Assembly (NCBI GenBank): GCA_977020255.1
Contig: CDROCS010005690.1
Coordinates: forward strand, 62,001-126,000
Direction of reading: 5' to 3'
DNA length: 64,000 nt
DNA from: Obrimoposthia wandeli
Lineage: Eukaryota
Shown: in pieces, positions 1 to 58,693 of the stretch
Position numbering within the stretch: the stretch's first letter is position 1
Layout: each line of letters opens with the position of its first letter
Position numbers and translations under genes: made by a program
The notes under the pieces: model-generated
Database searches by the model: none
What the model saw: the letters and a program-made list of their open reading frames with translations, nothing else
Told to the model about the DNA's origin: nothing

Positions 1-820
1 CACTTTCAAAAATACATTACGACTTTATTTCACAATGTATCAATGCTTTTATATCTTCAAAATACTTTATCAATAGTTTCCTCTGACTCTCACCAATAGT
101 ACGTATGCTGGCCTCGTGTGCTGCTGATCCGTCCTCGATATGTTTCCTCGGATGTCAGTTGTTGGCAGATTCAAGTTCGGAGGGCTGCTCGGTTTTCCGT
201 AGGTTGACTTGTCAATACGGCGTTTTTCGATTCCGAATGTTGTGAAATCTGAATTATCTGGCTGCACTTTTCGTTAGAACTCTGAATTATCTGGCTCCAC
301 TTTTTGTTAAAACTCTGAATTATCTGGCTCCACTTTTCGTTAAAATCTGAATTATCTGGCTGCACTTTTCGTTAGAACTCCTCCGCGACTCAATTCCGCA
401 GTCTACTTGTTGCTTGCTGTTCAGAGGTCCCGATCCCGTTAAGTGCTCTCTCATACACTGCTAATGGGTTTCTGTTGTCGTAGCTCCCAGACTGCTAATG
501 GGTTTCCAATGTACGACTAGTTCGACTTTCCTATCCGCCCCTCCTCTCAATAAACTTTTCGCAATAATCCTCTTAATTAGATTTTCGTTTTACTTAATTG
601 ATTCTTGTTTTTTTGGGGCCCTTAATAATAATTTAACCTCCCATTCATACAGCGCACTACACACGACCTTCGTGGTCCTTAATATTCAATTTACCTTTTA
701 ATTTTAATAATTTAATTCTAATATTCAATTTTATTTAATTTATAACCTTGCTTTCAAGGATTCTTATTTTACTATAATTTCGATTAATTATTTTATTTTT
801 ATCAATTCCTAAACCTAACA
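1..820 (-). repeat. LTR-like repeat, left copy (partial)
   Basis: Matches 11437-12771 and ends ...AAACCTAACA at 820. Has 4 units of the 32-33 bp repeat and lacks the block 12151-12330. Confidence 0.9.
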
Positions 821-1070
821 TATCTCGGGGGTTCTAAAAATGTTACGTCCCCGGAACGTATCGATTTTACTTTACTAGCCTCTGGGCTACTGATTTTAAG
901 TTCATCCCTACTAATTCAAGCATTCAGTACTCATCAACATGCCTAATGTTTAACAAAATTCGGTTTTTTAGTTGTTAATATAGTGAATAATTTGGACAAA
1001 GTCTCAAATATTCACTAATTTATTATACACAAAAATGGCTTTATAGATAAAGGAAAGGAGTAGGAAAGGA
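821..1070 (-). repeat. 250-bp LTR-adjacent block duplicated at 12772-13021
   Basis: Runs from TATCTCGGGGGTTCTAAAAATG to GGAGTAGGAAAGGA and appears identical in both places. Confidence 0.9.
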
Positions 1071-1091
1071 TGAATGTAACGTTATCAGTTG

Positions 1092-1627
1092 TCAATTGTT
1101 GATGGTAAGGTCTATTGTCACGGTTTGTTGGTTTCGATTGTCCAGATAGAGCATGACCTGCTCCAGGGGTAGGTCTGGAAAGGACGGAATGTCCCCGTTG
1201 TATAGGAGTAGCTGCTGGCTCAGGGTCAGGTGTGGGCTTTCGATAAATAGGTCGAAGTTCTGCCCGTTCAGCTCATGGTTCTCCATCCATAAGCGTCTGG
1301 CCTGTTGCCATGAACGGCAGTCGCGGCTAGACCGCTATCGCTCGCGGATGCCCAATTGTGTGTTGCGACGGCGCGCGAGGCACACAGAGCACTTACAGTG
1401 CTCGCCACCAATGCAGCTGGTGGGTGAGCGGGTGCCCTTGGATCGTCCACGGCACTGGAGAGTCCACTTGCAAAAGGGTGCCCGGCACATCGGGCATGTG
1501 ATGTGGCCGTGGGTCGAGCCTTGGCCCACGAATAGAGGCAGGACTCGTGGAATTTGTGTTGGCACCCGACAGGGGATGCCGACGCTGCCCAGATTTTCTC
1601 GAGGCAAATTGCACAAAGCATCTGCAC
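1092..1627 (-). pseudogene. RING-H2 protein 3 (frameshifted near 1520, nonsense TAG at 1335-1337)
   Basis: CAIC...CQHKFHESC in one frame joins CPMCR...CKCSVC in a second frame. That frame continues past a single TAG into ORF 1092-1286. Confidence 0.8.
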
Positions 1628-1964
1628 AATAATTACTCTTTAATTTGGGGTTCGATTGGGTTTAATATTAATTTACGAAATTAATATTTTAATTTTAATG
1701 TTATATTTTAATCCTACCGAATTCTGCTTTGATTTTAGGCATGTTTTTTCACATTCATACTAAGCATAAAAAATTGTCTTTTTGAGTTTCAGTCTTAATA
1801 ATTACAATTTCAAATAAACAACACACATAAAAATGGTAACGGTCATTTTACAGTTTCACAAGATTATACAATTATGATTACAATTATGGTAGCTAATTTA
1901 TCGCGGTATGCGATACACAGGGGTAGTTCATGATGTCATGTTTTAAGTCAAAAGTTACCTTCGG

Positions 1965-2270
1965 TTACTGCTGGCTGTTGGGCTGGCCTGTGCGTCGCTC
2001 CTCCACGCAGAACGAACACCAGCAGTCGCAGATGTTTTTCCAGCAGTGTACAATGGGTACCACTGCTTGGAGGCTGTCCCGGTTGTAGACATAGTGCACC
2101 GAGAAGGTTGCTCTGCACATCGGGCAGTTTGGGTAGTCGAGGGGATTGTTGTTGTTGGCGATTGGGATCCACGTCTCGAGGCATTCGACGTGGAACTGGT
2201 GGTCGCAGTTGTTGGGTTTGGTGTAGAGGTCCACGATGTTCTCGTAGCAGATGGAACATTCTCCAGACAT
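1965..2270 (-). CDS. RING-H2 (C3H2C3) E3 ligase-like protein 2
   Basis: CSIC-x13-CDHQFHVEC-x18-CPMCR; C-terminal CWKNICDCWCSFC. Confidence 0.9.
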   Translation of the reverse strand: MSGECSICYENIVDLYTKPNNCDHQFHVECLETWIPIANNNNPLDYPNCPMCRATFSVHYVYNRDSLQAVVPIVHCWKNICDCWCSFCVEERRTGQPNSQQ

Positions 2271-2330
2271 TACTGTGAGAGGGTTGATGTTGAATTTGGG
2301 CTCGATTGAGGACTGGTGGTTGTGTGATAT

Positions 2331-2630
2331 TTACACAAAAGTGGTCGGATTTTGTCGTTCTGACAGACAGTAGTAACACCAACATTCTCTCAAATTCTTC
2401 CAACAGAATATCACTTGTACATCTACATCCTCTTGGTTGGTTTCTAGTCTGATTAACCTTGTGAATTGTCTTCTGCATACAGGGCAACGAGGGTATGTCG
2501 GATAGGGAGTTTCTCCATATGTTCTGATCCATTTTGATAAACAATCCTCGTGGTGTAAATGATTGCAGGTTTCGGGTCTTGTTCTTCGTTCGGTTAAATC
2601 TTCCAAACATATTGGGCATTCTTCGGACAT
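2331..2630 (-). CDS. RING-H2 (C3H2C3) E3 ligase-like protein 1
   Basis: CPIC-x13-CNHLHHEDC-x18-CPVCR; C-terminal CWKNLRECWCYYC; paralog of 1965-2270. Confidence 0.9.
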   Translation of the reverse strand: MSEECPICLEDLTERRTRPETCNHLHHEDCLSKWIRTYGETPYPTYPRCPVCRRQFTRLIRLETNQEDVDVQVIFCWKNLRECWCYYCLSERQNPTTFV

Positions 2631-2755
2631 TCTAAATACATTATGACAATTAATTTCTACATGAGTTTTACATATTTCTACTTATTTGTACAATCGCTTC
2701 TAGATATTTCTACATATTTTTACACCCTAATTTATCTACAACCTCCTCTGACTTA

Positions 2756-4951
2756 TCATGTCTTGATGGGAGGCGGAGGTAAGGGTCGCAATTCCACTTC
2801 CTCCATTGTGGGTGTGTTACAGCATCGCAGTCCTTCGCATTTTCGTCGTATTCTTGGGCATACCTGGCTGCCTTTCACGCACACGACTGTCAATAGAACC
2901 GCTGCTGTTGACACTACTGCCATTCCAATTAGAGCATTGACCGCTGTTATTCCGCTGTCCGATGATTGGTAATCATACTTCATTTTGTTGTTTGTCGGTT
3001 TGAATGACGTTTCCATTGGTATTGATCGGTTTCCATGTATTATGTCCGATTTTCTAATAACTCGCGGATTTGGATATTTTGTTTTCGGTCCAACAGGTAT
3101 TCTTAATTGGGATTTGATATGATATTTGGGATCTAGTGAAATCGTTCCCTTCACTCTTGTCCTCTCAATAATTGTGCTTTGATTTCTGGGCTCGAGCTCT
3201 TTTCCTTTCACCTCTGTCTTTGTTATGATTACTTTTGGCTTCTCGGAATGACGTTTACTTCCGTTTACCTTTGCCTTCTTTTTGACTATGATTGGTTTTT
3301 CGGAATGACGTTTACTTCCTTTCACCTTTTCCTTTTTTATGACTATGATTGGTTTTCCGGGAATGATTTTCCTGGGTTTGATACTTATACCGAGTCCACG
3401 AAATCGACGTGTCTGGTATCTTAGAGTTATGTAGGATATTTCACCTGTTATTACTATGATTATGGTAGAGATCTCTCTAGCATTGCTGGGAATTCGGTTA
3501 CATAGACGTTCTGTATCAAAATGTGGTACTAACATTTGGTTTTGAATTTCGAATCTGATTCCACCATCTGGATTGGGACACGACACTGTTACTTTGTCAG
3601 TTTCTAACAATCTGAAGAATAATCTAACGGAATTCCATACGGTTTTACGTCGTCTACCTGTGATCATAATCCTGTCGACAACTTTCCAGATGCGCTCGTC
3701 GTTAGGTAATATTAATGACTTTGTTTGGATAAATTGAATAATCCGTTTCCTTTTTGATATTGTTATTCGTAGGTATAATACCTTTTCATGGTAGAATAAT
3801 ATCAGTCGGTAATAAAGTTTATGTTGGTCAATCTTTATTTTGATCTGGCGAATGACATACAATTTCTGATCGACATTTTCGGTTGCTGATGTTTGTAGGT
3901 GAATGTCTATTACGTAATTTGTTTTTATTAGAGGTATTTTTATGGATAACGCCCGTATCGTATCTTGTCTCCATTTACTGATCATGATCTCATAACCAGC
4001 CTCGGTCGTGGTGATTTGCATGATCAGCATGATTCCGATGATCGTCCGATTCCGAATCTCAGGAACTTCTCTGGAATAACTCAAGTTACTCATATAGTAC
4101 GGTCTTTCCTCGATATGTTCATATATCGTTGGCTGGTACTCTGGTGCTGGTTCATTTAGGAATGCTGGTCTTGGTATACTTGTGTTGAAGTTTTGTAAAT
4201 TCATTTGACCTGCTTGTCTTGCGAGATCATGACGTTTCTTTTTTGATCTCAACTCCATCTTTGTACAACAAAACAAGATGAGTAATATTAATATTATAAA
4301 TCCAATGATCAATGCCAGTATTGGATTAACCAATTCTAGAATACCATAACGTATTGCTGGTATCCCTTTACTCTTGATGGTTAATATTTTAAATTTATGT
4401 ACACTTTGGTTGGACATGTCACTGAGAAGTACTATTTTAGTTTGTCCAAATGTGTAATCTTCACATGTGACAACACTAACTCCATAATGTCCATTAAGTG
4501 TTTTCATTTCGGTCGCTGGGACTATACACATTCGTCCTGGACATCCTTTCACACACATGACCATTACGGCTTTACTTTGAGACGTCTTGATTATTTCTAG
4601 GGTGTTGTCTAGATTTCTCAAATGTAAATTATATCCAGGTAGCTTCATCAATTCAGCTTTACTGGCTGGAATGGCTTGTAGTACCAATCCAATTACTACT
4701 CCGTAGATCAATCCTTGTGCAACAGTGCACAGGGCCTTGATTGTCCTTTTGCAAAGGATTTTGATTATCATTCGTTTGAGAGACATCTGTTTCTGGTTAG
4801 GTCGTTTTGTTGTCTGTCGTTGTTTTGACATTTCTTCGATTCCAGTTTTTCCGATAATCAACTGTACCTGTTTACCTTGTATCATCAACTTTCCGAATCC
4901 ATTTTTGGCGGACAAACATGTTTTATGTCCTTCCATCGTTTCAATTATCAC
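2756..4951 (-). CDS. Multi-membrane polyprotein: two signal-peptide/ectodomain/TM units of unknown function
   Basis: 731 aa open frame. Signal-like segments GLIYGVVIGLVLQAIPASKA and TIIGIMLIMQITTTEAG; TM segments ILALIIGFIILLILILFCC and ALIGMAVVSTAAVLLTVVCV; Pro-rich C-tail PLPPPP. Confidence 0.7.
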   Translation of the reverse strand: MIIETMEGHKTCLSAKNGFGKLMIQGKQVQLIIGKTGIEEMSKQRQTTKRPNQKQMSLKRMIIKILCKRTIKALCTVAQGLIYGVVIGLVLQAIPASKAELMKLPGYNLHLRNLDNTLEIIKTSQSKAVMVMCVKGCPGRMCIVPATEMKTLNGHYGVSVVTCEDYTFGQTKIVLLSDMSNQSVHKFKILTIKSKGIPAIRYGILELVNPILALIIGFIILILLILFCCTKMELRSKKKRHDLARQAGQMNLQNFNTSIPRPAFLNEPAPEYQPTIYEHIEERPYYMSNLSYSREVPEIRNRTIIGIMLIMQITTTEAGYEIMISKWRQDTIRALSIKIPLIKTNYVIDIHLQTSATENVDQKLYVIRQIKIKIDQHKLYYRLILFYHEKVLYLRITISKRKRIIQFIQTKSLILPNDERIWKVVDRIMITGRRRKTVWNSVRLFFRLLETDKVTVSCPNPDGGIRFEIQNQMLVPHFDTERLCNRIPSNAREISTIIIVITGEISYITLRYQTRRFRGLGISIKPRKIIPGKPIIVIKKEKVKGSKRHSEKPIIVKKKAKVNGSKRHSEKPKVIITKTEVKGKELEPRNQSTIIERTRVKGTISLDPKYHIKSQLRIPVGPKTKYPNPRVIRKSDIIHGNRSIPMETSFKPTNNKMKYDYQSSDSGITAVNALIGMAVVSTAAVLLTVVCVKGSQVCPRIRRKCEGLRCCNTPTMEEVELRPLPPPPIKT

Positions 4952-5125
4952 TCTCTTACTTCCATACTAACGTGTTTTGATGACATCGCCGTCGAATATA
5001 TACGTCGGACCTTTTGTATCCGCATCTTTTTGTATTTCCCTCACAATTCGCCTTCTTCGCTTGCATCCGGCGAAAGTTGATGATATTCGGTCAAGTGTGC
5101 GCTGTCGGTCAGCTTCGTAGTCCAT

Positions 5126-5521
5126 TCATAATTGATTCAGTAATCTGTTTTGTGGATAAAATATCGCTTCATTCACTATGTTATCCTGAATCCTTTCATC
5201 TAGATACACAAGTACTTGGTTCGTTGGTCCATTCGGTCTCTTCATTTTCACAAACTGGAATCTTTTACTATCGGTTCTCATAGATCGGAGACATTTTCGG
5301 ATAAACCACACATCAATTAGTCCTATCAACACTAATAGCATCATCAGTGCCGGTGTATTGTACTGTATGATGTAGTTGTTGATTTCTTTGAACCATGAAC
5401 TATTTCCGTGGTCCGAGCCTATCTCTTGTGCTCCCGTTATCGGAATTAGACAACTTAACAAGCCTAGTGCTAGCAATCTTTGGTATTGATAGCTGGGAAC
5501 TGTTGTTGTAGCTTCATTTGT
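5126..5521 (-). CDS. Small type-I membrane protein
   Basis: Signal-like LLALGLLSCLIPITGA and TM ALMMLLVLIGLIDVWFI. In frame with the upstream DSP2 ORF across one TAA. Confidence 0.6.
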   Translation of the reverse strand, partial: TNEATTTVPSYQYQRLLALGLLSCLIPITGAQEIGSDHGNSSWFKEINNYIIQYNTPALMMLLVLIGLIDVWFIRKCLRSMRTDSKRFQFVKMKRPNGPTNQVLVYLDERIQDNIVNEAIFYPQNRLLNQL

Positions 5522-6100
5522 TTATCGTTGTTGCTTCCTTTTTTCGGAGTATTTCTCTATTTCTCGAACGAGTAACGGTTTGAATTCCGTATCTGGTCTA
5601 TTCTGTTTGATATAAACCATCGCTTCCTCTGGTGTATGACCATGGTACTCTACCAACAAGGATACACCTATGGTAGGAGCTAACATTGTACCTTTTTTCT
5701 GGTATATCAGAACGCCGTTTCCTTCTGTGACTTCGGCTTGGATGGTTTGAGTCAACTTCATCAGGTGTTGTTGTGCATCGTTTATCTCTCGATTGGAAGC
5801 ATGTATGTATCGAGTTGTGTCATCTTCAGTATGTTGACACAGACTGATTATCTCATTTCCGACTTCAACAATATTAATTACTCGGTTGATACTGTGGAAC
5901 TTTAATCCAGCAGTATCTATATCTCCTGGATGACATAGAAATACTTTTGGCATTATCTGCGTAATTTTGTCGACTCCAGCTAAGAATAAACCGGTCAACG
6001 ATAGTGCTTGAAGAAAATTCTTTTTCTTTGGATCCTCGGGGATGTCGTCCATCCGTCTCTGTTCTTGCAACATGAGTTGGTAATTTGACAATTGTCCCAA
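5522..6100 (-). CDS. C-terminal helix of DSP1 plus a second, catalytically dead dual-specificity phosphatase domain
   Basis: Starts (L)GQLSNYQ, the expected end of DSP1 after a frameshift near 6105. Then ITQIMPKVFL, INRVINI, VLIYQKKGTMLAPT (HCxxGxxR lost) and EAMVYIKQNRP. Confidence 0.75.
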   Translation of the reverse strand: MGQLSNYQLMLQEQRRMDDIPEDPKKKNFLQALSLTGLFLAGVDKITQIMPKVFLCHPGDIDTAGLKFHSINRVINIVEVGNEIISLCQHTEDDTTRYIHASNREINDAQQHLMKLTQTIQAEVTEGNGVLIYQKKGTMLAPTIGVSLLVEYHGHTPEEAMVYIKQNRPDTEFKPLLVREIEKYSEKRKQQR

Positions 6101-7740
6101 AAAATTAAGGTTGCAATACTTCTTCTTTCCTGTAGGTATTTCAGCGCTTCTAGTACCTGCATTCGTCTAGTCTTTATTAGATACGCTAATACTAGAGTTG
6201 CTGATCGGGAGATTCCTTTCTGACAATGTACCAACACTTTTCCTTGGTTTTGGAGTTCTCTGTGAAGTATCTCGTTTGTTTCTACGAACCATTCGAGAAG
6301 ATTAGCTTCCATTGAGTCTTTTACTCTTAATGTCATAGCTCTGATCGTCTGATATTGCGATTTGTGATTCATTGTAACATTGATCACGTATGTTATCCCT
6401 TGTTCCAACAGTTTCTTTTCGTCTGTTGCATCTTCCACATTTCCGAGGTATAACTTATCTGGAATGATCTCACTCATTGGTGGCATTAATTCTGACTCTT
6501 CAAGGTTTAGTCTTTCTAATCTCTTCTCTATTTGTTCGTCACATTCGTTCACTTCTCGCATAACTTCGAATATGTCTTCAATTCGGCTATTTGTTATCAC
6601 TCTGCCTACTATTAGGGCTGATTTTCCTTCTGGAATCTCGTCACTGTTATCGAAATCGGGTGCTTTTCCCATTTGGATTTCTGGTACGTTTGAAGTTTTC
6701 AGTTTCAAAAGAAATGGACAATTTGGTGCATCTCTTTTATGACGTTTCATTGGGTTTTCATTGTTCTCCCACTTTCTAAACTTTACTCTACACCATACGC
6801 ATCGTACTACTTCCCCATGACCATAACTACTTGTCGCGTTTAACATTTGTAAACCTGTTCTTGCCATTTTACGTGACATTTCTTTTGAATAGTACGGTTC
6901 TAGTGATCTTCGTCTATTTTTCTCGATTCTCAAGGGATCTTTTTCTGACAGATTCACATATGTTATTTTCCTCCTCGTCATAGCTTGTGGTCCGGAGTTT
7001 ACATCTTTGTAGTGAAGTATCGACTTTACTAGCGCTTCCTGTTTCCTATCTTGGTACGGATTTCCCATACGGAACATAGTGTATTTTTCCTTTTCGACTA
7101 TAGGTCCTCTCAACATTTTTATCTCACTCACTGAACTGTCGTTCTTAAAACTCTTGTTGTTTGGTAATATAATTATTCTTTCAAACATCCGTATTACGTC
7201 CATCCCAATCATGACTGGACTACCACAATCTGTGAATATTCTAGCATTTAACTGTAATGCTCTTCCATCGATATTTAACGAACATTTCAGTGTTCCTTCT
7301 GACACTACATCTGTACCATTCACGTTAAAAAATGTCTGTTTTCTAGGACATACTTTTCTTAATTCTTTTGATGACAATATTTCTTTACTCAATACTGATA
7401 CTGCAGATCCAGTATCAACTTCAGCAAGATATTCTCTTCCGTTCAGTGTTACTGCTACTTGTGGTGGAGCATTTGGATTCTCATTGGATATCCTAGACTT
7501 TAGAATTCTTCTAGAATTATCTTTTTTGTCTTTTTCCTCTGCTTGCGGAATCTCACTGTAGTTTACCTTAGGCCATCTTATCATTAAAATGCCTCTCTTG
7601 AATTTTTCCTTCTCTTCTTTTAGTTCCTTCATTGGATATAGGTTTAGCGCCACTTCTTCCTTGTCTGGTAACGGAATCTTTGGTTTTCCTGGTATCTTTG
7701 CATATTCTCCTGGGCTATCATTATCGTCGTCGTTGTCGTC
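5995..7740 (-). CDS. Retropepsin aspartic protease - BIR - dual-specificity phosphatase polyprotein segment
   Basis: AEVDTGSAVSVL and VMIGMDVI (protease, ~7165-7467); CVWC-x16-H-x6-C (BIR, ~6706-6927); SEIIPDKLYLGN and VLVHCQKGISRSATLVLAYL (DSP, ~6110-6483). The frame is open up to 7740, directly after the env TGA. Confidence 0.92.
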   Translation of the reverse strand, partial: DDNDDDNDSPGEYAKIPGKPKIPLPDKEEVALNLYPMKELKEEKEKFKRGILMIRWPKVNYSEIPQAEEKDKKDNSRRILKSRISNENPNAPPQVAVTLNGREYLAEVDTGSAVSVLSKEILSSKELRKVCPRKQTFFNVNGTDVVSEGTLKCSLNIDGRALQLNARIFTDCGSPVMIGMDVIRMFERIIILPNNKSFKNDSSVSEIKMLRGPIVEKEKYTMFRMGNPYQDRKQEALVKSILHYKDVNSGPQAMTRRKITYVNLSEKDPLRIEKNRRRSLEPYYSKEMSRKMARTGLQMLNATSSYGHGEVVRCVWCRVKFRKWENNENPMKRHKRDAPNCPFLLKLKTSNVPEIQMGKAPDFDNSDEIPEGKSALIVGRVITNSRIEDIFEVMREVNECDEQIEKRLERLNLEESELMPPMSEIIPDKLYLGNVEDATDEKKLLEQGITYVINVTMNHKSQYQTIRAMTLRVKDSMEANLLEWFVETNEILHRELQNQGKVLVHCQKGISRSATLVLAYLIKTRRMQVLEALKYLQERRSIATLIFWDNCQITNSCCKNRDGWTTSPRIQRKRIFFKHYR

Positions 7741-9527
7741 TCAATAGTTTCTTGGGTCTCGCATCATGGTTCTTGTTTGATGTTGCTCCTTCTTGAGGGC
7801 TCGCAACTCGTTCTCGTGATGATGGTGCATTAGATATTTTGCTAAAAATGGAAAACATCCAATTATAAGTTGCCAGGTGATTCTGGTTATCCTGTATAAA
7901 CTATACGTAGACAACACCTGGGCTATAATTACCTGCACAAATTTAATTATAACATAAATACCTATGATACCCGAAAATAATTGTCCTAAAACAAGGAATT
8001 TCCCCCACATCTTTCTAAGTGTCTGATGTGCTGCTTCCTTGAAATGACTTGGCGATAACAACATATCAAAATTCGCATATCTAGCTCCTGGCGGTAATGC
8101 TCGATGTACCATCTCCGTAAGTACTCTGGCCCTTTTTACTGGAAACATTATTTCGTTCCAGGCCGCTTTTAAGTCTTTTTCATTGTACAAACCTGCGTTC
8201 TCCATATTTTCTACCGCTTCGAATTTCATTTTTCCTTTAAGATTCGTCATTTTTATCATCTCTGGAGTTTTCGTTGGCTTTCGGTCAGGTAGCGTTATCC
8301 ATAGATCATTCGTCATCTGATATTCAGGTGCCATTATATTAGAGCAGCTGATTTCTTTAGTTGGAGTGTCTTTTGGAAGTATCATTCTCGTGATTGGTTC
8401 AACAAAGAGTTCTTTTAAATTATGCGTTACTGTCAATTCACTCGTACATCGGTTTGTTGTTCTCAACTGTACTTCTACTTTATTACACTTGTAAGTATAC
8501 AATACTTATCCCATGGTTTTAGCAAATACTCCTTCATCCAAGGGTAATATTGGTGCTACCATGTCTGGATTCGTAATAGCTAATGCTAACTTTGTTCTTA
8601 CGATCTCTTTGTTTAGCTGGCAATCTCTCTCGATCATCATCCGATATAACTGTTCCATTTGCATCAATTCTTTATGATAATAAAAATCAATTTTATTATT
8701 AAAATACGTGTGTAGCTGCATATCTCTAGGTTTTAGCTTGGTTTCTGCCAATGCTATTAATTCTCTAGACAAAACTATTCCTGGATAGTTTGTAGTACTA
8801 ACAGTCATTCCGCATCGCGCTTTGTTTCTCTTTTTAATAAATATCAATCCTTCTTTTGTTGATGTTGCCATTAACAGTGTAGGTGTCGCCGTCATAGGAA
8901 TTGGTCTTGTTTCATTATGAAATCCTTCTCCAACTTTATTATACAGGAACCCTTCTCCATCTTTATTATACAGGAACCCTTTTATTTTATTAAAGCTAAT
9001 TTCTTTCAAAAATACTAAAGAGCATTGTTTCGGATTCACGTGATACACAATTGTGGATTCACCTGTAAAACAAGATGCATCTGTCATTCTACATTCCGGA
9101 TACTTCATCATTCGTTGTGTCTTTTTATCAAAATTGGAGGTCCATGTTTTTAATTCGATCTGGTAAGTTACGTCCATTACTAACTCTGTTACTTTGATTC
9201 CACGCACGTTTTTTATTCCTCCGTCACAAGATCCATCAGGCCATCGTTGTCTTCGCAATCTCTCGGAAAAACCTCATGTGGTTTGTACGGTTTGGTAGGT
9301 GTGATTTCCGACATAAAACTTCTATGGCCACTATAGAATTCGTGATAACTTGAATGGACTGAACATTCTTTCACTTCTACTTGTATTTTATCAACATCCT
9401 GATACACAAAGTAGTTTTCAATACCTTTAACTTCTAATTTTGACGGTTGTGATTCTGGACAGTCTTCGCTGTCAAGCAGTGAATACTTTTTTTCCATCTT
9501 TGGTATGCTACAGTCGTATGCTATCAA
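7741..9527 (-). pseudogene. env: Envelope glycoprotein, chuvirus-G / herpes gB-like (class III) type; frameshift near 9245 and nonsense TAA at 8506-8508
   Basis: Mature N-terminus LIAYDC...YSLLDSEDC; CGMTVSTTNYPG; LHTYFNNK; DCQLNKEIVRTKLALA..NP; MG*VLYTYKC.KVEVQLR..CTSELTV..F..P.TR; C-terminal TM (LVLGQLFSGIIGIYVIIKFVQVII). Confidence 0.85.
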
Positions 9528-11096
9528 CCCTGATGCCTGTTGCATTCCTATGAACATTACTAACATCATCATCATCATCGTTGTGGAAATATTTGGTTGA
9601 TTGTTTCTTTCTTTCGGACGGTATTGTTTATTTTCCCTTTGACGATTCTCATGACATTGTTCGTCATCGTTTTCGTTCATTTCCACAATGGTTTTAGCGT
9701 AGTCACTTAATTTTGCCCAACCTCCGTTTTCGTCAATTCGTCTCTGCAATACATTCTCGATCAAATACATCGCTTCATTTATTCCTTGTTTGACTTCGTG
9801 AGGTTGGCTCGTTCGTTCCGTCAATTGGAAACATAGATATGTGATTGCTGTAATTAACTTTTTATTTGTAGTCTGGTTTCCACATAATCTCGCTAAAACT
9901 TCACCGTCATAAAATCTATCTATTGATGCATGGTATACATGATTCGCAGTCATTCTCTTTACTGCAGACATTTGTGATCTAACTGCTTTGGTCAAATTGT
10001 CTGTTATATCGGTTGTTTCATCTTTGTACATTTTGAACAACTTCGGCTTCACTTGCCTGAGAATTCCCGTAAGTATATCTTTACTACTTGGCGCTTCCGA
10101 ATTCATATCACCTCTGATATCTTCATTTCGCTCCGTACTATACTGCTCCAATGACGCTGCTAGCTGTCCAATGCTTAGATGTCTCTCCTCATCAGTTTGT
10201 GGTGCAGTTAGAACATTTCGTAATATACTTCCGTCCTTTCTAGGTCTTCCAGGTCCTCTTCGAAAATACTGATACTCAGTTTGATTCTCTCCTGGATCAT
10301 ATGGTTCACCATTATACTGTATCTCTTGACTTGGTCCTTCTTCATGGCCAATCTCTTCGTTTTGTCGCATCATCTGCTCTGCTTGTCTATCTCTGTATGC
10401 AGCATGCCAAATTGGTGAATCCAAATCTACAATTTCGGAGATTTCGTCTTCTCCTACTAGTTGGGTTACGTTTTCGTTTTGTCTCACTTGGTTGGCTATA
10501 TCCGTGACTTCATCTTGTCCGGTTTGAATTATCTCTGGTTCTGGTGGTACTTCGACCACCGGAGTCGTCAACTCATTTTCTAGTTCCACGTCTTGTAATT
10601 CAGCTACGTACGGTTCTGGTGTGGATGTCTTGTTCCAAGCTTCAGCTACATCATTATCTCCGCTTTCGCTTGAACTGTCTAAAATTTCTATAGGCGTTTT
10701 TATCATTTCTAATGCAGAGTTTAATATCTCCGTTAATCCTTCATTATCTACTAACTCTTGACGTCCTACAGTGATGACATCAATTTTTTCCTCTAATTCA
10801 TTTCCTATCGGATATCCACACTCGACTGGTACGTCCTCATCATCTAGTGATCTCCCTTTATAATGGAACAACATATTCATTTCATCAATTTCAAGTTTCT
10901 CGGCCAACTTTTTTCGAATAGTTTTCATCGTTTGATACACGTTAAGTTTTTCATGTATTATCTGTCCGGAAATTAATCGAAGAGAAATTTTCATCGTTCC
11001 TTTTTGGTTTGATCTCTGCACGTAACGACCATATCCTTTCAATAATCCTCGTGATACTTCTTTGTAACCCAAGTTATCATGACTATGTTTAACCAA
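9213..11096 (-). CDS. Ubiquitin/SUMO-like domain - AT-hook - Bcl-2-like domain - signal peptide - env N-terminus
   Basis: MKISLRLISGQII...LFHYKGRSLDDEDVP (UBL, ~10767-10994); RRGPGRPRK (AT-hook); YLIENVLQRRIDENGGWAKL (BH2-like); MMMMMLVMFIGMQQASG followed by LIAYDC. Confidence 0.8.
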   Translation of the reverse strand: MVKHSHDNLGYKEVSRGLLKGYGRYVQRSNQKGTMKISLRLISGQIIHEKLNVYQTMKTIRKKLAEKLEIDEMNMLFHYKGRSLDDEDVPVECGYPIGNELEEKIDVITVGRQELVDNEGLTEILNSALEMIKTPIEILDSSSESGDNDVAEAWNKTSTPEPYVAELQDVELENELTTPVVEVPPEPEIIQTGQDEVTDIANQVRQNENVTQLVGEDEISEIVDLDSPIWHAAYRDRQAEQMMRQNEEIGHEEGPSQEIQYNGEPYDPGENQTEYQYFRRGPGRPRKDGSILRNVLTAPQTDEERHLSIGQLAASLEQYSTERNEDIRGDMNSEAPSSKDILTGILRQVKPKLFKMYKDETTDITDNLTKAVRSQMSAVKRMTANHVYHASIDRFYDGEVLARLCGNQTTNKKLITAITYLCFQLTERTSQPHEVKQGINEAMYLIENVLQRRIDENGGWAKLSDYAKTIVEMNENDDEQCHENRQRENKQYRPKERNNQPNISTTMMMMMLVMFIGMQQASGLIAYDCSIPKMEKKYSLLDSEDCPESQPSKLEVKGIENYFVYQDVDKIQVEVKECSVHSSYHEFYSGHRSFMSEITPTKPYKPHEVFPRDCEDNDGLMDLVTEE

Positions 11097-11428
11097 TTCT
11101 GCTCCACTTCTTCCAATCTGTGCACTTTAATTGTTTGCAATTTGGCCAAAACTTCTGGAGCTTCACTCGTTTCATCTAACGGTTGATTCAACGTCTCCTT
11201 AGCTTCACTAATTATCTTTTTTACATTTTCCATACTCGTAGCATTTCTTGCTGCTTCTATGTGATCAGTCATAGGTTGTGCGTTACACGTTTTCTCTATT
11301 GGTGTCTCATACGCTTCTAGCATTCGGTTTATTAAATCATTCATCTCCTCTCTCGAGTGTAGACTTTTTCGTGTTTCGACAACGTAGATGAATTCGCCAT
11401 CTTTGTGTGTGTATATCAAATATATCAA
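11039..11428 (-). CDS. N-terminal ORF of the cargo region, unknown function; probably frameshift-linked to 9213-11096
   Basis: 129 aa helical-looking ORF overlapping the next ORF. A candidate ATG at 11400 would join this frame if a 2-nt AG duplication were removed. Confidence 0.45.
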   Translation of the reverse strand: MIYLIYTHKDGEFIYVVETRKSLHSREEMNDLINRMLEAYETPIEKTCNAQPMTDHIEAARNATSMENVKKIISEAKETLNQPLDETSEAPEVLAKLQTIKVHRLEEVEQNWLNIVMITWVTKKYHEDY

Positions 11429-11726
11429 TGCTTTTACACTTTCAAAAATACTTTACGACTTTATTTCACAATGTATCAATGCTTTTATATCTTCAAAATA
11501 CTTTACGACTTTTATTTCAATCAATACTTTTATATCTTCAAAATACTTTACCAATAGTTTCCTCTGACTCTCACCAATAGTACGTATGCTGGCCTCGTGT
11601 GCTGCTGATCCGTCCTCGATATGTTTCCTCGGATGTCAGTTGGCAGATTCCAGTTCGGAGGGCTGCTCGGTTTTCCGTAGGTTGACTTGTCAATACGGCG
11701 TTTTTCGATTCCGAATGTTGTGAAAT

Positions 11727-12165
11727 CTGAATTATCTGGCTGCACGTTTTGTTAGAACTCTGAATTATCTGGCTCCACTTTTCGTTAAAACTCTGAATTA
11801 TCTGGCTCCACTTTTCGTTAAAATCTGAATTATCTGGCTGCACTTTTCGTTAGAACTCTGAATTATCTGGCTCCACTTTTCGTTAAAATCTGAATTATCT
11901 GGCTGCACGTTTTGTTAGAACTCTGAATTATCTGGCTCCACTTTTCGTTAAAACTCTGAATTATCTGGCTCCACTTTTCGTTAAAATCTGAATTATCTGG
12001 CTGCACTTTTCGTTAGAACTCTGAATTATCTGGCTCCACTTTTCGTTAAAATCTGAATTATCTGGCTGCACTTTTCGTTAGAACTCTGAATTATCTGGCT
12101 GCACTTTTCGTTAAAATCTGCCAAATCTGGCTGCACTTTTCGTTAGAACTGACAAATCTGGTCCT
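11727..12165. repeat. 32-33 bp tandem array (TCTGAATTATCTGGCT(G/C)CACTTTTCGTTA(G/A)AAC)
   Basis: About 12 intact and 2 degenerate units; 4 units in the left copy (248-379). Confidence 0.95.
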
Positions 12166-12177
12166 ATCGCGGGTCTT

Positions 12178-12211
12178 ATTTATACCCGTAGTGTATTGCC
12201 ACGCTTTTATA
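12178..12211 (-). promoter_or_regulatory. Candidate TATA boxes of the LTR promoter
   Basis: Minus-strand TATAAAA (12211-12205) and TATAAAT (12184-12178), ~800 bp upstream of the first ORF. Confidence 0.45.
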
Positions 12212-13021
12212 AGTGCTTTTTGTTTGCTGCAGAGATTCTACAAGAGTAAATAATGGATAATCTCAAATCCACTTTACCTCCGGTTTCCTAGACAGTCGCT
12301 GTCCAGACGCTAATGGACTTCCTGTTTGTTCCTCCGCGACTCAATTCCGCAGTCTACTTGCTGCTTGCTGTTCAGAGGTCCCGATCCCGTTAAGTGCTCT
12401 CTCAGACACTGCTAATGGGTTTCTGTTGTCGTAGCTCCCAGACTGCTAATGGGTTTCCAATGTACGACTAATTCGACTTTCCTATCCGCCCCTCCTCTCA
12501 ATAAACTTTTCGCAATAATTCTCTTAATTAGATTTTCGTTTTTCTTAATTGATTCTTGTTTTTTTGGGGCCCTTAATAATAATTTAACCTCCCATACATA
12601 CAGCGCACTACACACGACCTTCGTGGTCCTTAATATTCAATTTACCTTTTAATTTTAATAATTTAATTCTAATATTCAATTTTATTTAATTTATAACCTT
12701 GCTTTCAAGGATTCTTATTTCACTATAATTTCGATTAATTATTTTATTTTTATCAATTCCTAAACCTAACATATCTCGGGGGTTCTAAAAATGTTACGTC
12801 CCCGGAACGTATCGATTTTACTTTACTAGCCTCTGGGCTACTGATTTTAAGTTCATCCCTACTAATTCAAGCATTCAGTACTCATCAACATGCCTAATGT
12901 TTAACAAAATTCGGTTTTTTAGTTGTTAATATAGTGAATAATTTGGACAAAGTCTCAAATATTCACTAATTTATTATACACAAAAATGGCTTTATAGATA
13001 AAGGAAAGGAGTAGGAAAGGA

Positions 13022-13139
13022 AATTTAATCTAAAATCTTATATTCAATTTTATCTAATTTATAACCTTGCTTTCAAGGATTCTTATTTCACTATAATTTC
13101 GATTAATTATTTTATTTTTATCAATTCCTAAACCTAACA
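13022..13139 (-). repeat. Extra LTR-terminal fragment (118 bp)
   Basis: Matches 12661-12771, including the CCTTGCTTTCAAGG hairpin and AAACCTAACA end; flanked by ATAT (13140-13143). Confidence 0.9.
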
Positions 13140-13169
13140 ATATTACTGTTAATGTTTATAATATCAGAA

Positions 13170-13390
13170 AGAACAATAATGAACTAAATTGGATAATATA
13201 TATTGTTTCTGAATAATGGGACAATAAACTGTTTTGAATAATGATATTGGTTTCTGAATAATGGAACAATAAACTGTTTTGAATAATGATATTGGTTTCT
13301 GAATAATGGGACAATAAACTGTTTTGAATAATGATATTGGTTTCTGAATAATGAGACAATAAACTGTTTTGAATAATGATATTGGTTTAA
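13170..13390. repeat. 45-bp minisatellite
   Basis: About 4.5-5 copies of TGAATAATGATATTGGTTTCTGAATAATGGGACAATAAACTGTTT. Confidence 0.9.
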
Positions 13391-18129: not shown

Positions 18130-18516
18130 ATGGATAAATTTATTAAAAAGATCAATACAAGTCCATTGATACGAAAAAGAATAACAGCAGGAGATAATAG
18201 TATGCCGCATTTTCCCAAAACGTTTGGAGTTCCGCTCAAAAAACTTCTAGAGAGAGAAGATATTTCAAAAATACCTAATGTAGTTCTTATTATATGCAAC
18301 TTTCTTTTGCTGGACGGCATCGATACAGAGGGAATATTTCGTGTAAATGGAAATACAAAAGCTGTAGAGAGTATAAAAGCAATGTTTGAGGAACACCATT
18401 CTCCGAGCATGTCTAATTGTACGGATGTACACGCTGTCGCATCAGTGTTAAAGTGCTTTCTTCGAGAACTACCGGATGGCTTGGTTCCTGAGAAAATAAC
18501 GCTTCAGCTGTTTGAT
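18130..18516 (+). CDS. FAM13A: FAM13 exon 1 (RhoGAP N-half)
   Basis: FGVPL...EGIFRVNG (arginine finger present)...LRELPDGLVP; donor GTAAGT at 18517. Confidence 0.92.
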
Positions 18517-48980: not shown

Positions 48981-50110
48981 TGTTAGGATTGGGATTTTAA
49001 AAATTTTCAAAAATAATATTTATTATATAAGAGAATAAAACCTTGAAAGCAAGATTAAAATAAAATAAAATCAAAATTCAAAATTCAAATAAAATAAAAT
49101 CAAAAAAAGAGTATTTTAGGACCTTGACGAGGTCAAGTGTTAATGCGAAAAGTTTAGGGCCCAAAAGAACGAACAAAAAATGAGAATTAGAAGGAAACCA
49201 ATTAAGGAATTTTAGGATTAATTACGGAAATCGAGTATATACAGCGAAGTGATTACTGAAGGGAAACGATCAGCTGTTGCAGAAATCCCATTAAGAAGTT
49301 TTTAATTGCTGAAGGGAAACGATCAGCTGTCACGGAAATTCCATTAAGTAGTCTGCCACAGTCTCAGTTATTGGAGCACTCGAGCCTCGGAGAAAAGCAC
49401 TAAATCTAAAAGGTAAAATTTAGTATAAAAAAGAATTTTCCTAACTTGATTTTCAAAAAAAGTATAAAAGAAGTAAACGTGATCTCAGAAGTTCAGACAG
49501 ACAGATTAAATCAAAATTGATATCTTGATTTTCAGAAAAAGTATAAAAGAAGTAAACGTGATCTCAAAAGTTCAAACCGACAGATTAAATCGAAATTTAT
49601 AAAGAACCGTAGAAGACAAGCCGGGGAAAGAAACAGGAAGCAGCGAAGCTATATTCCTCGGAATCGACAAGTGGCACCGGAAGGACAACAGCTACTCCGA
49701 AGGAAAGGTGAACGTTGCTAAACGAATTGTCGAAATATTGTTATATTTACTAAACGAATTGTTGAACTGCTGTCATATTTACTAAACGAATTGTCGAGCT
49801 ATTGTTAAATTATCATAATCGAATTTTAAAGGAAGTAAATTGTGTTTTGACTAAAAGAGAAATTGCATTTTGACAAAAAAAAATTACCTTTCGAAGTAAA
49901 AAGTATAGAACTCACAAAATTGTTAAGACCAATTAAAATCGATACGTTAAGACATCCCCATTTGTGTGACGTTTAGTACAGTAATTAGGACTAATTGTTG
50001 TAATTTTTAGGAACGTAGTTTAGAGAATAAAGTTTTCCTACATTTAGCAGAGTTTTTTGAACGAACCCTTGCAATCAGGTAAGTACCGATCCACCATACA
50101 TTACACCACA
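48981..50110 (+). mobile_element. LTR of the same superfamily, plus orientation; right end not defined
   Basis: Starts TGTTAGGATTGGG after ATAT. Carries reverse complements of the CTTGCTTTCAAGG, GACC..GGTC and ACGTATCGATTTT motifs. No matching TSD found at the right. Confidence 0.75.
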
Positions 50111-54756: not shown

Positions 54757-54818
54757 TTTTAATAAAATTTTGATTTTTTCGTTATAAACAACAGGATTTG
54801 CTGCAAATTTAGATAATT

Positions 54819-55307: not shown

Positions 55308-55507
55308 ACAATTCTTCTAATTGGAGAAATTTATTATTAAAATTTTACAACTAATTATAAATAAGCCTTTTGATTGGAGGAATAAAAATATTTTTTTTAA
55401 CCAATAACAGATAAACAATCCTTCTCAGTGGAGGGATAAATTCAATTTTTTAATCCAATAGGAATCACCTAGAGTATCACCTAAATAATAAATATGTTAT
55501 AGTTAAG

Positions 55508-57939: not shown

Positions 57940-58136
57940 TTTTTTTAGTATAGTTTTTTAAAATTTTAGATCCCTATGACACCTTGACTCTAACTTTTTG
58001 TTATTTCAAAACATTTTTTAGGTTGGGCTTTATCTTTGCTGACAGATCTCGGGATGTTGTGTTTAATAAATGTATTAAAAAAAAATTCGTCTTATGTCTT
58101 TTATTATTTTACCCTTATATTTTTAGGGATTTAAAA

Positions 58137-58672: not shown

Positions 58673-58693
58673 TTTGTTTTCTTAAATGTATTG

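What the first reader, a model, noticed from the sequence alone, without database searches (positions are those of the whole stretch)
1..13139. LTR-bounded element with envelope and protease but no RT or integrase, carrying a virus-style anti-apoptosis/ubiquitin/signalling gene set
Seen: ~99% identical long repeats flank ~10.3 kb of minus-strand ORFs encoding UBL, AT-hook, Bcl-2-like, env, retropepsin, BIR, DSP, pseudo-DSP, three membrane proteins and three RING-H2 proteins. No RT, RNase H, integrase or gag/zinc-knuckle motif was found. Known: IAP/BIR, vBcl-2, VH1-type DSP and RING E3 genes are typical host-manipulation genes of large DNA viruses (baculo-, pox-, herpesviruses), not of non-autonomous LTR elements. 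Inference: a helper-dependent satellite retroelement, mobilised in trans by an autonomous Gypsy-type partner (related solo LTRs have 4-bp TSDs). It would contribute fusion protein and cell-survival effectors in a two-component endogenous retrovirus system.
Basis: partly seen in the sequence, partly recalled or inferred. Interest (0 to 1): 0.93.

Follow-up and report, generated by a model that had tools for sequence, protein, structure and literature searches.

The report
Pol-less Burro-type giant retroelement derivative
This is a rearranged, partly broken copy of a planarian-type "Burro" giant gypsy retrovirus-like element that has lost gag and reverse transcriptase/integrase but keeps its envelope, protease and cell-survival genes; that unusual gene set is already a published hallmark of the family, so the copy is an interesting variant rather than a new kind of element.

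Summary
Two ~99% identical repeats enclose ~10.3 kb whose minus strand is 93% ORF (1.6% in shuffles). It encodes UBL, AT-hook, a Bcl-2-like domain, a class III env, retropepsin, BIR, an active-looking DSP, a dead DSP, three RING-H2 paralogs and orphan membrane ORFs. Family-specific pol and gag profiles find nothing.

The interpretation needs correcting. Env relatives (40-45% identity) sit in giant Ty3/gypsy elements ordered gag-UBL-Bcl2-env-PR(xN)-Ank-RT-RH-IN plus accessory genes. That is the published architecture of planarian Burro/GYPSM1 elements, which are autonomous and already known to carry BIR, BCL2-like and ubiquitin-like domains. The cargo is therefore a family trait, not a satellite signature.

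The repeats are not plain LTRs. The true LTR starts at 820/12771 (TGTTAGG, after a motif shared with a relative). A 250-bp internal segment is duplicated upstream of the 5' LTR, beside a 114-bp LTR fragment. The 3' LTR runs off the window.

This copy is decaying: env, the PR-BIR-DSP gene and RING3 are interrupted. The most likely reading is an internally deleted, rearranged Burro-type derivative. A propagating helper-dependent lineage is possible but untested. DSP/pseudo-DSP and the GC-rich RING genes are the new details.

The parts
1..820 (-). 3' LTR. On the sense (minus) strand it starts TGTTAGG at 820. Its outer end is cut by the window start, with about 32 bp missing by inference. It holds a 33-nt tandem array of 4.2 copies at 244-380.
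821..1070 (-). Segment B: the last 250 nt of the internal region. It ends in a hairpin plus the motif TTTTTAGAACCCCC-N6 immediately before the LTR start. It occupies the place of a polypurine tract but is not purine-rich.
   Evidence: The same motif precedes the 3' LTR of relative L005. It occurs nowhere else in the window or loci.
1268..1627 (-). RING-H2 paralog 3, interrupted by one frameshift. It is a GC-rich island (GC 0.60).
1965..2270 (-). RING-H2 paralog 2 (101 aa, ATG start), GC 0.55. It shares a C-terminal Cys/Trp motif with paralog 1.
   Evidence: No word-sharing homolog was found.
2331..2630 (-). RING-H2 paralog 1 (99 aa, ATG start), GC 0.40.
   Evidence: No exact copy is on record.
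2756..4951 (-). Orphan 731-aa ORF with three long hydrophobic helices and a basic repeat encoded by a 57-nt tandem unit at 3202-3366. It may encode more than one product.
   Evidence: No Pfam match, no homolog, AF2 pLDDT 36, tandem repeat. The ORF length is far beyond chance.
5126..5476 (-). 116-aa orphan ORF with two hydrophobic segments.
5522..7653 (-). PR-BIR-DSP-pseudoDSP gene, interrupted by one frameshift. Domains: retropepsin 7189-7458, BIR 6709-6885, DSP 6115-6453 (active-site loop conserved), pseudo-DSP 5552-5941 (catalytic Cys and Arg positions replaced).
   Evidence: No protein with this architecture exists in the 5.8-billion-protein database.
7741..9578 (-). env: class III viral fusion glycoprotein (PF24664) with an N-terminal hydrophobic signal and a C-terminal TM segment. 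It is interrupted by one frameshift and one in-frame stop.
   Evidence: It is 40-45% identical to env of pol-bearing relatives.
9579..10994 (-). Pre-env protein in the same ORF as the env N-terminus. Domains: UBL 10815-10982, acidic linker, AT-hook 10230-10259, Bcl-2-like domain 9657-10073.
11039..11403 (-). Leader between the LTR and the UBL gene. It holds a 129-aa ORF without homologs and a candidate primer-binding site at 11383-11399 (unverified). There is no room for gag.
11404..12771 (-). 5' (middle) LTR. It starts TGTTAGG at 12771 and its inferred end is ...ACACACA at 11404. It is about 520 bp longer than the other copy because its internal tandem arrays are expanded (33/65-nt unit, about 13 copies, at 11723-12152).
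12772..13021 (-). Segment B': a second copy (99% identical) of the internal 3' segment B, lying upstream of the 5' LTR where host DNA would be expected.
13026..13139 (-). X': the first ~114 nt of another LTR copy (94-97% identical), starting TGTTAGG at 13139 and abutting B'. Non-repeat flank follows at 13140 onward.

Best explanation
The locus is a rearranged and decaying non-autonomous derivative of a Burro-type giant Ty3/gypsy endogenous retrovirus-like element. That lineage has the gene order gag - UBL - Bcl-2-like - env - protease(s) - RT - RNase H - integrase - accessory genes.

SHOWN.
- The copy keeps the LTRs, the leader, the UBL/AT-hook/Bcl-2-like/env/PR block in family order, and the conserved motif before the 3' LTR.
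- It has no gag, RT, RNase H or integrase.
- Downstream of PR it carries BIR, DSP, a dead DSP, orphan membrane ORFs and three RING-H2 paralogs.
- Several genes are interrupted.
- The layout on the sense strand is LTR-fragment / B' / LTR / body / B / LTR.

INFERRED.
1. The copy arose from a pol-bearing, cargo-bearing parent by internal deletions that removed gag and RT-RH-IN.
2. The extra B' and LTR fragment come from unequal recombination or tandem duplication between copies followed by deletion, or from nesting in an older copy.
3. In an intact relative, the long same-frame ORF run would be read as one or a few polyproteins cut by the retropepsin.
4. The hydrophobic run between the Bcl-2-like domain and env would act as an internal signal. 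That would leave the UBL/Bcl-2-like part membrane-anchored on the cytosolic side and put env in the secretory pathway.
5. Bcl-2-like, BIR, DSP and RING modules would dampen cell-death and stress signalling in the expressing cell.
6. Any copying of this derivative would need gag, RT and integrase from a related autonomous element.
For: FAMILY PLACEMENT.
- The exhaustive env search gave 537 hits. The best (40-45% identity) lie in 1,300-4,800-aa polyproteins.
- Their Pfam content is env, PR x2-7, RVT_1, RNase H and integrase. P0029 has a Bcl-2 match upstream of env, and gag/zf-CCHC matches occur upstream in others.
- Contig contexts show gag, ubiquitin-like, env, PR, Ank, RT-RH-IN, then RNase_T or RING accessory ORFs.
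- The window's UBL and Bcl-2-like/env-N segments align to relatives at the syntenic place.
- The same LTR-start context is present in L005.
- The published Burro description matches domain for domain (PMC6431247). The GAG-ENV-POL order with class III env is reported in Platyhelminthes, Bryozoa and Nematoda (PMC13524379).

LOSS OF POL AND GAG..

DECAY. Env is in three pieces where relatives read straight through. The DSP profile match stops at position 116 of 133, and the missing C-terminal helix is in another frame. RING3 is split between frames.

REARRANGEMENT..

CARGO IN AUTONOMOUS RELATIVES. The L005 LTR pair encloses more than 20.8 kb, including an RNase_T ORF and P4Ha_N-like ORFs.
Against: - No sister copy (>=90% identity) and no parent with this exact cargo was available. 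'Deletion derivative' is therefore parsimony, not observation.
- DSP and these RING-H2 genes were not found in any of the seven relatives fetched.
- The LTR pair is about 99% identical and the ORFs remain very long. The copy is young, and some 'breaks', especially the frameshifts, could be assembly errors in AT-rich long-read sequence.
- Some in-frame stops may be genuine gene ends.
- The source organism is not identified. 'Planarian' rests only on similarity to the published architecture and on the ~30% GC background.
- The inner LTR end and the primer-binding site are inferred only.
Confidence: 0.65

Rival explanations
1. One reading: a propagating helper-dependent satellite lineage. This would be a distinct pol-less, gag-less family that is copied in trans by an autonomous gypsy partner and is retained because it supplies env and survival effectors.
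For: - LTRs, a leader with a PBS candidate and the conserved pre-LTR motif are retained.
- The LTRs are about 99% identical, so the copy is young.
- ORFs are very long, and the motifs of PR, BIR, DSP and RING1/2 are intact.
- The layout holds parts of more than one copy: three LTR starts and two B segments.
- The LTR superfamily has inserted repeatedly nearby with 4-bp duplications.
Against: - Only this one locus is known. No exact or close relative of its ORFs was found in any collection searched.
- Env, the PR-BIR-DSP gene and RING3 are interrupted in this copy.
- No pol-bearing element in the window shares its LTR. The other LTR pieces are only 68-82% identical, and the pol at 46-48 kb is decayed.
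- The cargo classes are also carried by autonomous family members, so they do not mark a satellite.
Confidence: 0.2
2. Assembly artefact: a chimeric or collapsed assembly of several Burro-like copies. This would create the pol-less join, the extra B'/LTR fragment, the unequal tandem arrays and some frameshifts.
For: - The family is reported as abundant, longer than 30 kb and a known obstacle to assembly in planarians (PMC6431247; PMC11410931).
- The two LTRs differ by about 520 bp in tandem-array length.
- The locus lies at the very edge of the window.
Against: - PR runs into BIR and DSP in one open frame of 552 codons with no discontinuity in base composition.
- The window contains no N runs.
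- The repeats are 99% identical over 692 bp without mosaic structure.
Confidence: 0.08
3. Host co-option: a domesticated locus in which the host retains element-derived env, Bcl-2-like, BIR, DSP and RING genes for its own use.
For: Long ORFs persist without pol, and the domain motifs are intact.
Against: - Near-identical LTRs indicate a recent origin rather than an old conserved locus.
- Several genes are interrupted.
- No orthologous proteins were found in any database searched.
Confidence: 0.04
4. An integrated fragment of a large DNA virus (baculo-, pox-, herpes- or nudivirus-like).
For: The gene classes IAP/BIR, Bcl-2-like, DSP and RING recur in such viruses (general knowledge).
Against: - The backbone is collinear with gypsy polyproteins.
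- The LTRs have a TG start and a family-conserved junction.
- No DNA-virus core gene lies in 1-13,143.
- The pPolB and A32-like ATPase at 55-62 kb belong to a separate Maverick-like cluster.
Confidence: 0.01

Closest known systems
Burro / GYPSM1 giant gypsy-like LTR retrotransposons of planarians (Jurka 2007; Grohme et al. 2018; reviewed in Arkhipova & Yushenova 2019, PMC6431247)
   Same: The window shares the order ubiquitin/SUMO-like domain, BCL2-like domain, mononegavirus-like env upstream of PR. It also shares a BIR domain, tandem repeats, an AT-rich host background, very long same-frame ORFs, and a set of apoptosis and ubiquitin modules.
   Different: This copy lacks gag/CCHC, MATH/TRAF, dUTPase, RT, RNase H, integrase and ankyrin. 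It is about 11.4 kb LTR to LTR, against more than 30 kb. It carries DSP, a pseudo-DSP and three RING-H2 genes that are not listed in the published description available to me. No Burro sequence could be compared directly, so the match is by architecture and through environmental relatives.
GAG-ENV-POL Ty3/gypsy 'errantiviruses' with class III (gB-type) ENV in Platyhelminthes, Bryozoa and Nematoda (Chary & Hayashi 2026, PMC13524379)
   Same: Env lies upstream of pol/PR, the fusogen is class III, and the LTR element is of gypsy type.
   Different: Those are intact gag-env-pol elements. That paper has no occurrence of 'Bcl-2' or 'non-autonomous'. Pfam places this env in the Monjiviricetes fusion family rather than under a herpesvirus gB family.
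Environmental relatives L001-L007 (ENA sample ERZ25039515)
   Same: Env is 40-45% identical. The UBL and Bcl-2-like or AT-hook segments precede env, PR follows env, and the same motif lies before the 3' LTR in L005. Accessory ORFs follow pol (RNase_T, RING C3HC4_3, P4Ha_N-like).
   Different: All of them that reach that far carry RT-RH-IN, and they have 2-7 PR-like domains. None has BIR, DSP or the RING-H2 paralogs.
Non-autonomous LTR retrotransposons (LARD/TRIM-type derivatives) and replication-defective transducing retroviruses (general knowledge)
   Same: These are LTR-bounded, have lost pol and depend on a helper. In transducing retroviruses, cellular signalling genes sit in place of replication genes.
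   Different: LARDs and TRIMs are largely non-coding, whereas this copy is 93% ORF and keeps env and PR. Its cargo classes pre-exist in the autonomous family rather than replacing pol by a fresh capture. The nearest cellular DSPs are only about 35% identical.
Bdelloid rotifer LTR retrotransposons that capture additional ORFs (Rodriguez et al. 2017, PMC5408684; seen, abstract only)
   Same: Gypsy-type elements that add extra ORFs beyond gag and pol.
   Different: The host phylum and the cargo differ. I did not read the paper beyond its abstract.

Membership tests
Burro-type / GAG-ENV-POL Ty3-gypsy endogenous retrovirus-like elements | Direct LTRs with TG...CA ends | tested here: inconclusive
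   The sense-strand start TGTTAGG is shared by four copies in the window and is analogous to TGTGAG in L005. A related solo LTR ends ...CCCCAACA. This element's own inner end (...ACACACA at 11404) is inferred, because the second copy runs off the window.
Burro-type / GAG-ENV-POL Ty3-gypsy endogenous retrovirus-like elements | Short (4-bp) target-site duplication | not testable with these tools
   The left flank lies outside the window. Two related solo LTRs in the window do have 4-bp duplications.
Burro-type / GAG-ENV-POL Ty3-gypsy endogenous retrovirus-like elements | Class III env of mononegavirus type located upstream of the protease | tested here: met
   PF24664 matches. Env is 40-45% identical to env in gypsy polyproteins, with PR directly downstream.
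Burro-type / GAG-ENV-POL Ty3-gypsy endogenous retrovirus-like elements | Ubiquitin-like and BCL2-like domains upstream of env | tested here: met
   UBL. Bcl-2-like: (each weak, all concordant). Both align to relatives at the syntenic position.
Burro-type / GAG-ENV-POL Ty3-gypsy endogenous retrovirus-like elements | gag (Retrotrans_gag plus CCHC knuckles) | tested here: not met
   The family gag HMM gives best E 0.35, and tblastn with relatives' gag finds nothing. Only about 400 bp lie between the LTR and the UBL gene.
Burro-type / GAG-ENV-POL Ty3-gypsy endogenous retrovirus-like elements | RT, RNase H and integrase | tested here: not met
   The family pol HMM gives best E 1.2, against 5e-25 for the positive control. 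I therefore file the copy as a derivative of the family, not as a full member.
Helper-dependent non-autonomous LTR element (satellite lineage) | Cis signals retained (LTRs, PBS, plus-strand primer site) without pol | tested here: inconclusive
   LTRs and the conserved pre-LTR motif are present. The PBS is only a candidate, because no tRNA gene was available for comparison.
Helper-dependent non-autonomous LTR element (satellite lineage) | Several independent insertions with the same pol-less structure | not testable with these tools
   The source genome is not searchable here. No exact or close copy exists in the protein or contig collections.
Helper-dependent non-autonomous LTR element (satellite lineage) | An autonomous partner with matching LTR ends and PBS | tested here: not met
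   Within the window only, the other LTR pieces are 68-82% identical and the pol copies are decayed. This is not tested genome-wide.
Endogenous large DNA virus | DNA-virus core genes contiguous with the cargo | tested here: not met
   No such domain lies in 1-13,143. The pPolB and ATPase at 55-62 kb form a separate Maverick-like cluster.

The most novel reading that the evidence does not exclude
The copy represents a real, multi-copy lineage of Burro-type satellites. These would have shed gag and pol yet keep env, protease and an enlarged anti-death/signalling module (Bcl-2-like, BIR, DSP with a pseudo-DSP partner, RING-H2 x3), and would ride on autonomous Burro elements. In addition, the GC-rich RING2 and RING3 islands (55-60% GC in a ~30% GC genome) would be recent acquisitions from a compositionally foreign source.
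Probability: 0.15. Interest if true: 0.7.

Novelty: new member of a known kind. Interest (0 to 1): 0.4.

Why it matters
Burro-type elements are among the largest and most gene-rich retroelements known, and the review that describes them calls their apoptosis and ubiquitin modules untested. This copy adds three details:

- The family's cargo repertoire extends to a dual-specificity phosphatase with a catalytically dead partner, and to a small RING-H2 gene family.
- The UBL/Bcl-2-like/env/PR block can persist without gag and pol.
- Such copies recombine into compound LTR structures.

If a survey of the source genome showed many such pol-less copies, that would be a natural example of division of labour between retrovirus-like elements. 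If it is a single relic, it is an ordinary deletion derivative of a remarkable family.

Tried and rejected
SEARCHES THAT FOUND NOTHING.
- The whole PR-BIR-DSP ORF against 5.8 billion proteins found only cellular DSP domains.
- The 731-aa ORF and RING2 found no homologs.
- The exact-sequence look-up of RING1 found nothing on record.
- Scans of viral and JGI metagenome contigs with PR-BIR-DSP found no relative.
- Rfam and tRNA scans of the window and loci found nothing, so the PBS could not be matched to a tRNA.
- The k-mer search for a shared PBS or leader in relatives gave only noise.

TOOLS THAT DID NOT HELP.
- The bacterial promoter/terminator scan is not meaningful for a eukaryotic LTR.
- The AF2 model of the 731-aa ORF had pLDDT 36, so I ran no fold search on it.
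- One Pfam call failed because a reference contained stops.
- Grohme et al. 2018 is not held, so Burro features come from the 2019 review.

IDEAS CONSIDERED AND DROPPED.
- That 1070/13021 are LTR ends. This is rejected because the conserved junction and three other copies put the LTR start at 820/12771/13139/16345.
- That 14703-16345 and 52773-54757 are the two LTRs of one 40-kb element. This is rejected because each has its own 4-bp duplication.
- That cellular tandem-DSP proteins would bridge DSP and pseudo-DSP. They align only to the first DSP.

- In private reasoning I worked out places of breaks and recalled a few short motif strings from memory.
- None of this was used as a query. No break places are listed in this report.

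Full report
1. WHAT IS THERE

The window has no N runs. A long direct repeat pairs 5-1070 with 11492-13021. Identity is 98.99% over 692 bp and about 95% over the part holding tandem arrays. Reading the sequence shows that the match continues to window base 1, which aligns to about 11436. The left copy is therefore cut by the window edge, and the element extends beyond the coordinates given.

Between the repeats the minus strand is almost wholly open. ORFs of at least 100 aa cover 92.9% of it, and the longest has 736 codons. In 300 shuffles the mean cover was 1.6% (maximum 10%) and the longest ORF 179 codons. The antisense strand and three control stretches of the window reach only 4-24%. The sense strand is A-rich (A 0.38, T 0.23), as is usual for retroelements.

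2. GENE CONTENT

- One 552-aa ORF holds a retropepsin (E 5e-6), BIR (1e-10) and DSPc (1e-29).
- The next ORF has a weak DSPc match (3e-6).
- Three consecutive ORFs match the viral fusion glycoprotein family PF24664, at profile positions 4-112, 246-375 and 379-622 of 653.
- Three small ORFs are RING fingers.

Against PDB, the DSP is closest to cellular DUSP10/4/1/2 (E about 1e-17). Its active-site loop HCQKGISRS aligns with HCQAGVSRS of the chain. The BIR is closest to NAIP BIR domains (E 2e-10). In the second DSP, the aligned loop reads YQKKGTMLA against YCKNGRSRS of a DUSP chain. The catalytic Cys and Arg positions are replaced, so 'pseudo-DSP' is right.

The UBL is supported by Pfam ubiquitin (E 0.009). 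A three-sequence profile also hits ubiquitin, SUMO-1, ISG15 and the RAD23 UBL.

The Bcl-2-like call rests on three weak but concordant results:
- a Pfam Bcl-2 match (E 1e-3) in the homologous segment of relative P0029;
- a three-sequence profile whose 60 best PDB hits are all Bcl-xL or Bcl-2, over the ...GGW... helix (best E 0.0055);
- a low-confidence AF2 model (pLDDT 61) whose 50 best Foldseek matches are all Bcl-2-family structures (E 0.05-0.5).

A GRPRK AT-hook-type motif is present, and relatives L001 and L004 have one in their pre-env segment. The 731-aa and 116-aa ORFs are orphans. They have no Pfam match and no homolog. The AF2 model of the 731-aa ORF gives only long hydrophobic helices at pLDDT 36. 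'Membrane proteins' is therefore plausible but unproven.

3. NO POL, NO GAG

Polyproteins of seven relatives match only env and PR inside 1-13,143, and their gag ORFs match nothing.

I built profile HMMs from the relatives' RT-RH-IN (782 positions, 9 sequences) and gag (518 positions, 10 sequences). I ran them with all filters off against every six-frame piece of 1-13,200. The best E-values were 1.2 and 0.35, which is noise. The same pol profile scored 5e-25, 1e-15 and 2e-15 on decayed pol copies elsewhere in the window. The absence is real.

4. WHAT FAMILY IT BELONGS TO

An exhaustive search with the best-conserved env piece gave 537 hits. The top ones are 40-45% identical and embedded in proteins of 1,300-4,800 aa. 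Their domains read env, PR, (PR...), RVT_1, RNase H and integrase. P0029 has a Bcl-2 match just before env, and P0030 and P0025 have gag or CCHC matches upstream.

Seven contigs, all from ENA sample ERZ25039515, show the layout:
- gag (Retrotrans_gag plus zf-CCHC), a ubiquitin-like segment, env, two to seven retropepsin-like domains with ankyrin repeats between them, and RT-RH-IN;
- then accessory ORFs: RNase_T in three contigs, a C3HC4 RING in one.

L005 has an LTR pair more than 20.8 kb apart. It encloses an RNase_T ORF and P4Ha_N-like ORFs. The window's UBL segment aligns to L003 and L005, and its Bcl-2-like/env-N segment aligns to L002 and L003, both at the syntenic position.

This is the architecture published for the planarian Burro/GYPSM1 elements. 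The review lists gag with CCHC knuckles, a Ubi2/SUMO-like domain, BCL2-like, an env with hits to mononegavirus fusion glycoproteins lying in frame between gag and pol, PR, dUTPase, RT-RH-IN, BIR and ankyrin repeats. It remarks on the prominence of apoptosis and ubiquitination domains (PMC6431247). The GAG-ENV-POL order with a class III env is also reported for gypsy 'errantiviruses' of Platyhelminthes, Bryozoa and Nematoda (PMC13524379).

5. THE REPEATS ARE NOT SIMPLE LTRS

In L005 the 3' LTR starts TGTGAG and is preceded by ...TTTTTGAACCCCC-N7. On the window's minus strand...TTTTTAGAACCCCC-N6 precedes TGTTAGG at 820 and again at 12771. Two more partial copies start with the same TGTTAGG, at 13139 and 16345. 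The motif occurs nowhere else in the window or in the seven loci.

14703-16345 is a complete related solo LTR. It reads TGTTAGG...CCCCAACA on the sense strand and is flanked by AAAG on both sides. 52773-54757 is another, flanked by TTTT.

The true LTRs are therefore <=1-820 and about 11404-12771. The inner end and a TGGCGA... primer-binding candidate at 11383-11399 are inferred only.

The 250 bp at 821-1070 (segment B) are internal sequence. A 99% identical copy of them (B', 12772-13021) sits upstream of the 5' LTR, abutting a 114-nt LTR start fragment (X', 13026-13139). Read 5' to 3' on the sense strand, the locus is X' / B' / LTR / body / B / LTR.

Two histories would produce this layout: a tandem or unequal-recombination product later trimmed by a deletion, or nesting into an older copy. 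I cannot decide between them, because the left flank is outside the window.

The two LTRs also differ by about 520 bp. Internal tandem arrays differ in copy number: the 33-nt unit has 4.2 copies in one and about 13 in the other.

6. STATE OF THE GENES (COUNTS ONLY)

I compared the ORFs with relatives, whose polyproteins are uninterrupted.
- Env carries one frameshift and one in-frame stop.
- One further in-frame stop lies between env and PR, where two relatives read through.
- The PR-BIR-DSP/pseudo-DSP gene carries one frameshift. The DSP profile match stops at position 116 of 133, and the missing C-terminal helix is found in the next ORF's frame.
- RING3 carries one frameshift.
- Three more in-frame stops separate same-frame ORFs further downstream. 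These may be true gene ends or nonsense mutations.

Long ORF pieces follow one another in the same frame at five junctions. That would be unlikely for independent genes (about (1/3)^5). It fits the family habit of one giant polyprotein: 4,844 aa in L001 and 4,873 aa reported for Burro ORF1.

With LTRs about 1% diverged, a handful of disabling changes in 10 kb is expected. Some frameshifts could be assembly errors.

7. HOW IT MOST LIKELY WORKS

Shown: the cis parts and the UBL/AT-hook/Bcl-2-like/env/PR block are those of the family. RT, RNase H, integrase and gag are gone.

Inferred:
- In an intact version, transcription from the 5' LTR would give a genomic RNA translated into one or a few polyproteins cut by the retropepsin.
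- The hydrophobic run between the Bcl-2-like domain and env would act as an internal signal. It would leave the UBL/Bcl-2-like part anchored on the cytosolic face and send env into the secretory pathway.
- The Bcl-2-like, BIR, DSP/pseudo-DSP and RING-H2 modules would blunt death and stress signalling in the expressing cell.
- Copying would need gag, RT and integrase in trans.

For this particular copy, the interrupted genes and the compound structure point to a relic. I put 0.65 on 'deleted, rearranged, decaying derivative' and 0.2 on 'member of a propagating satellite lineage'. The remainder goes to assembly artefact, co-option and DNA-virus fragment.

8. WHAT IS NEW

- None of the seven relatives has DSP or the RING-H2 paralogs.
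- The whole PR-BIR-DSP architecture has no match among 5.8 billion proteins.
- The searchable literature gave no report of DSP cargo or of pol-less Burro derivatives.
- RING2 and RING3 form discrete 55-60% GC islands between 23-30% GC spacers. The rest of the element is otherwise 33-42% GC and the surrounding genome about 30%. I have no explanation for this.

These are additions to a known kind, not a new kind.

9. LIMITS

The source organism is not identified, and 'planarian' is an inference from architecture and base composition. No Burro sequence was available for direct comparison. No sister copy was available, so selection on the cargo could not be measured.

I made no joined, repaired or consensus sequence.

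Noticed in passing
window 46167-48007 (minus strand): A decayed gypsy RT-RH-IN, about 45% identical to the family's RT core. Its sense strand has G 0.10, A 0.44, C 0.25, against G 0.21, A 0.38, C 0.18 in the finding's element. This accounts for the extreme GC and AT skew seen here. The pattern resembles sense-strand G-to-A hypermutation, though it could instead be a lineage with different base composition.
   Followed up: partly
window 54800-62000: A Maverick/Polinton-like cluster: protein-primed DNA polymerase B at 55971-57014 (+) (PF03175, E 2e-17), an A32-like packaging ATPase at 61329-61976 (-), and integrase (rve) pieces at 59855-60785 (-).
   Followed up: no
window 14703-16345 and 52773-54757: Two complete solo LTRs of related families, 68-82% identical to the finding's LTR over its first ~250 nt. 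They have TG...CA ends and 4-bp target duplications (AAAG and TTTT). A further inverted fragment lies at 48981-49147.
   Followed up: yes
window 1268-1627 and 1965-2270: RING3 and RING2 are 55-60% GC islands separated by 23-30% GC spacers, in an element of otherwise 33-42% GC and a genome of about 30% GC. GC rises toward the 3' end of the element. This is unexplained.
   Followed up: partly
L001, L004, L006 and proteins P0171, P0025: Relatives carry 2-7 retropepsin-like domains per polyprotein, both before and after RT-integrase. P0171 has seven. Ankyrin repeats lie between some of them.
   Followed up: partly
L001 21702-22841, L005 16542-17882, L007 9547-11622: An RNase_T (DEDD exonuclease) ORF recurs directly downstream of pol in three relatives. 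L005 also encloses P4Ha_N-like ORFs inside its LTR pair.
   Followed up: no
window 25844-26374 (minus) and 18130-18594 (plus): A separate RT fragment (PF00078, E 3e-18) and a RhoGAP-domain ORF or exon (PF00620, E 9e-20). The RhoGAP is probably a host gene.
   Followed up: no
window 12795-12811 and 844-860: A 7-bp-stem hairpin (TACGTTC CGG GGACGTA) lies immediately upstream of the conserved TTTTTAGAACCCCC motif that precedes each LTR start.
   Followed up: no
proteins P0001-P0006: The best cellular matches to the DSP are proteins with two DSP domains in tandem (DUSP13/29-like). This echoes the window's DSP plus pseudo-DSP pair and hints that the pair was acquired as a unit.
   Followed up: partly
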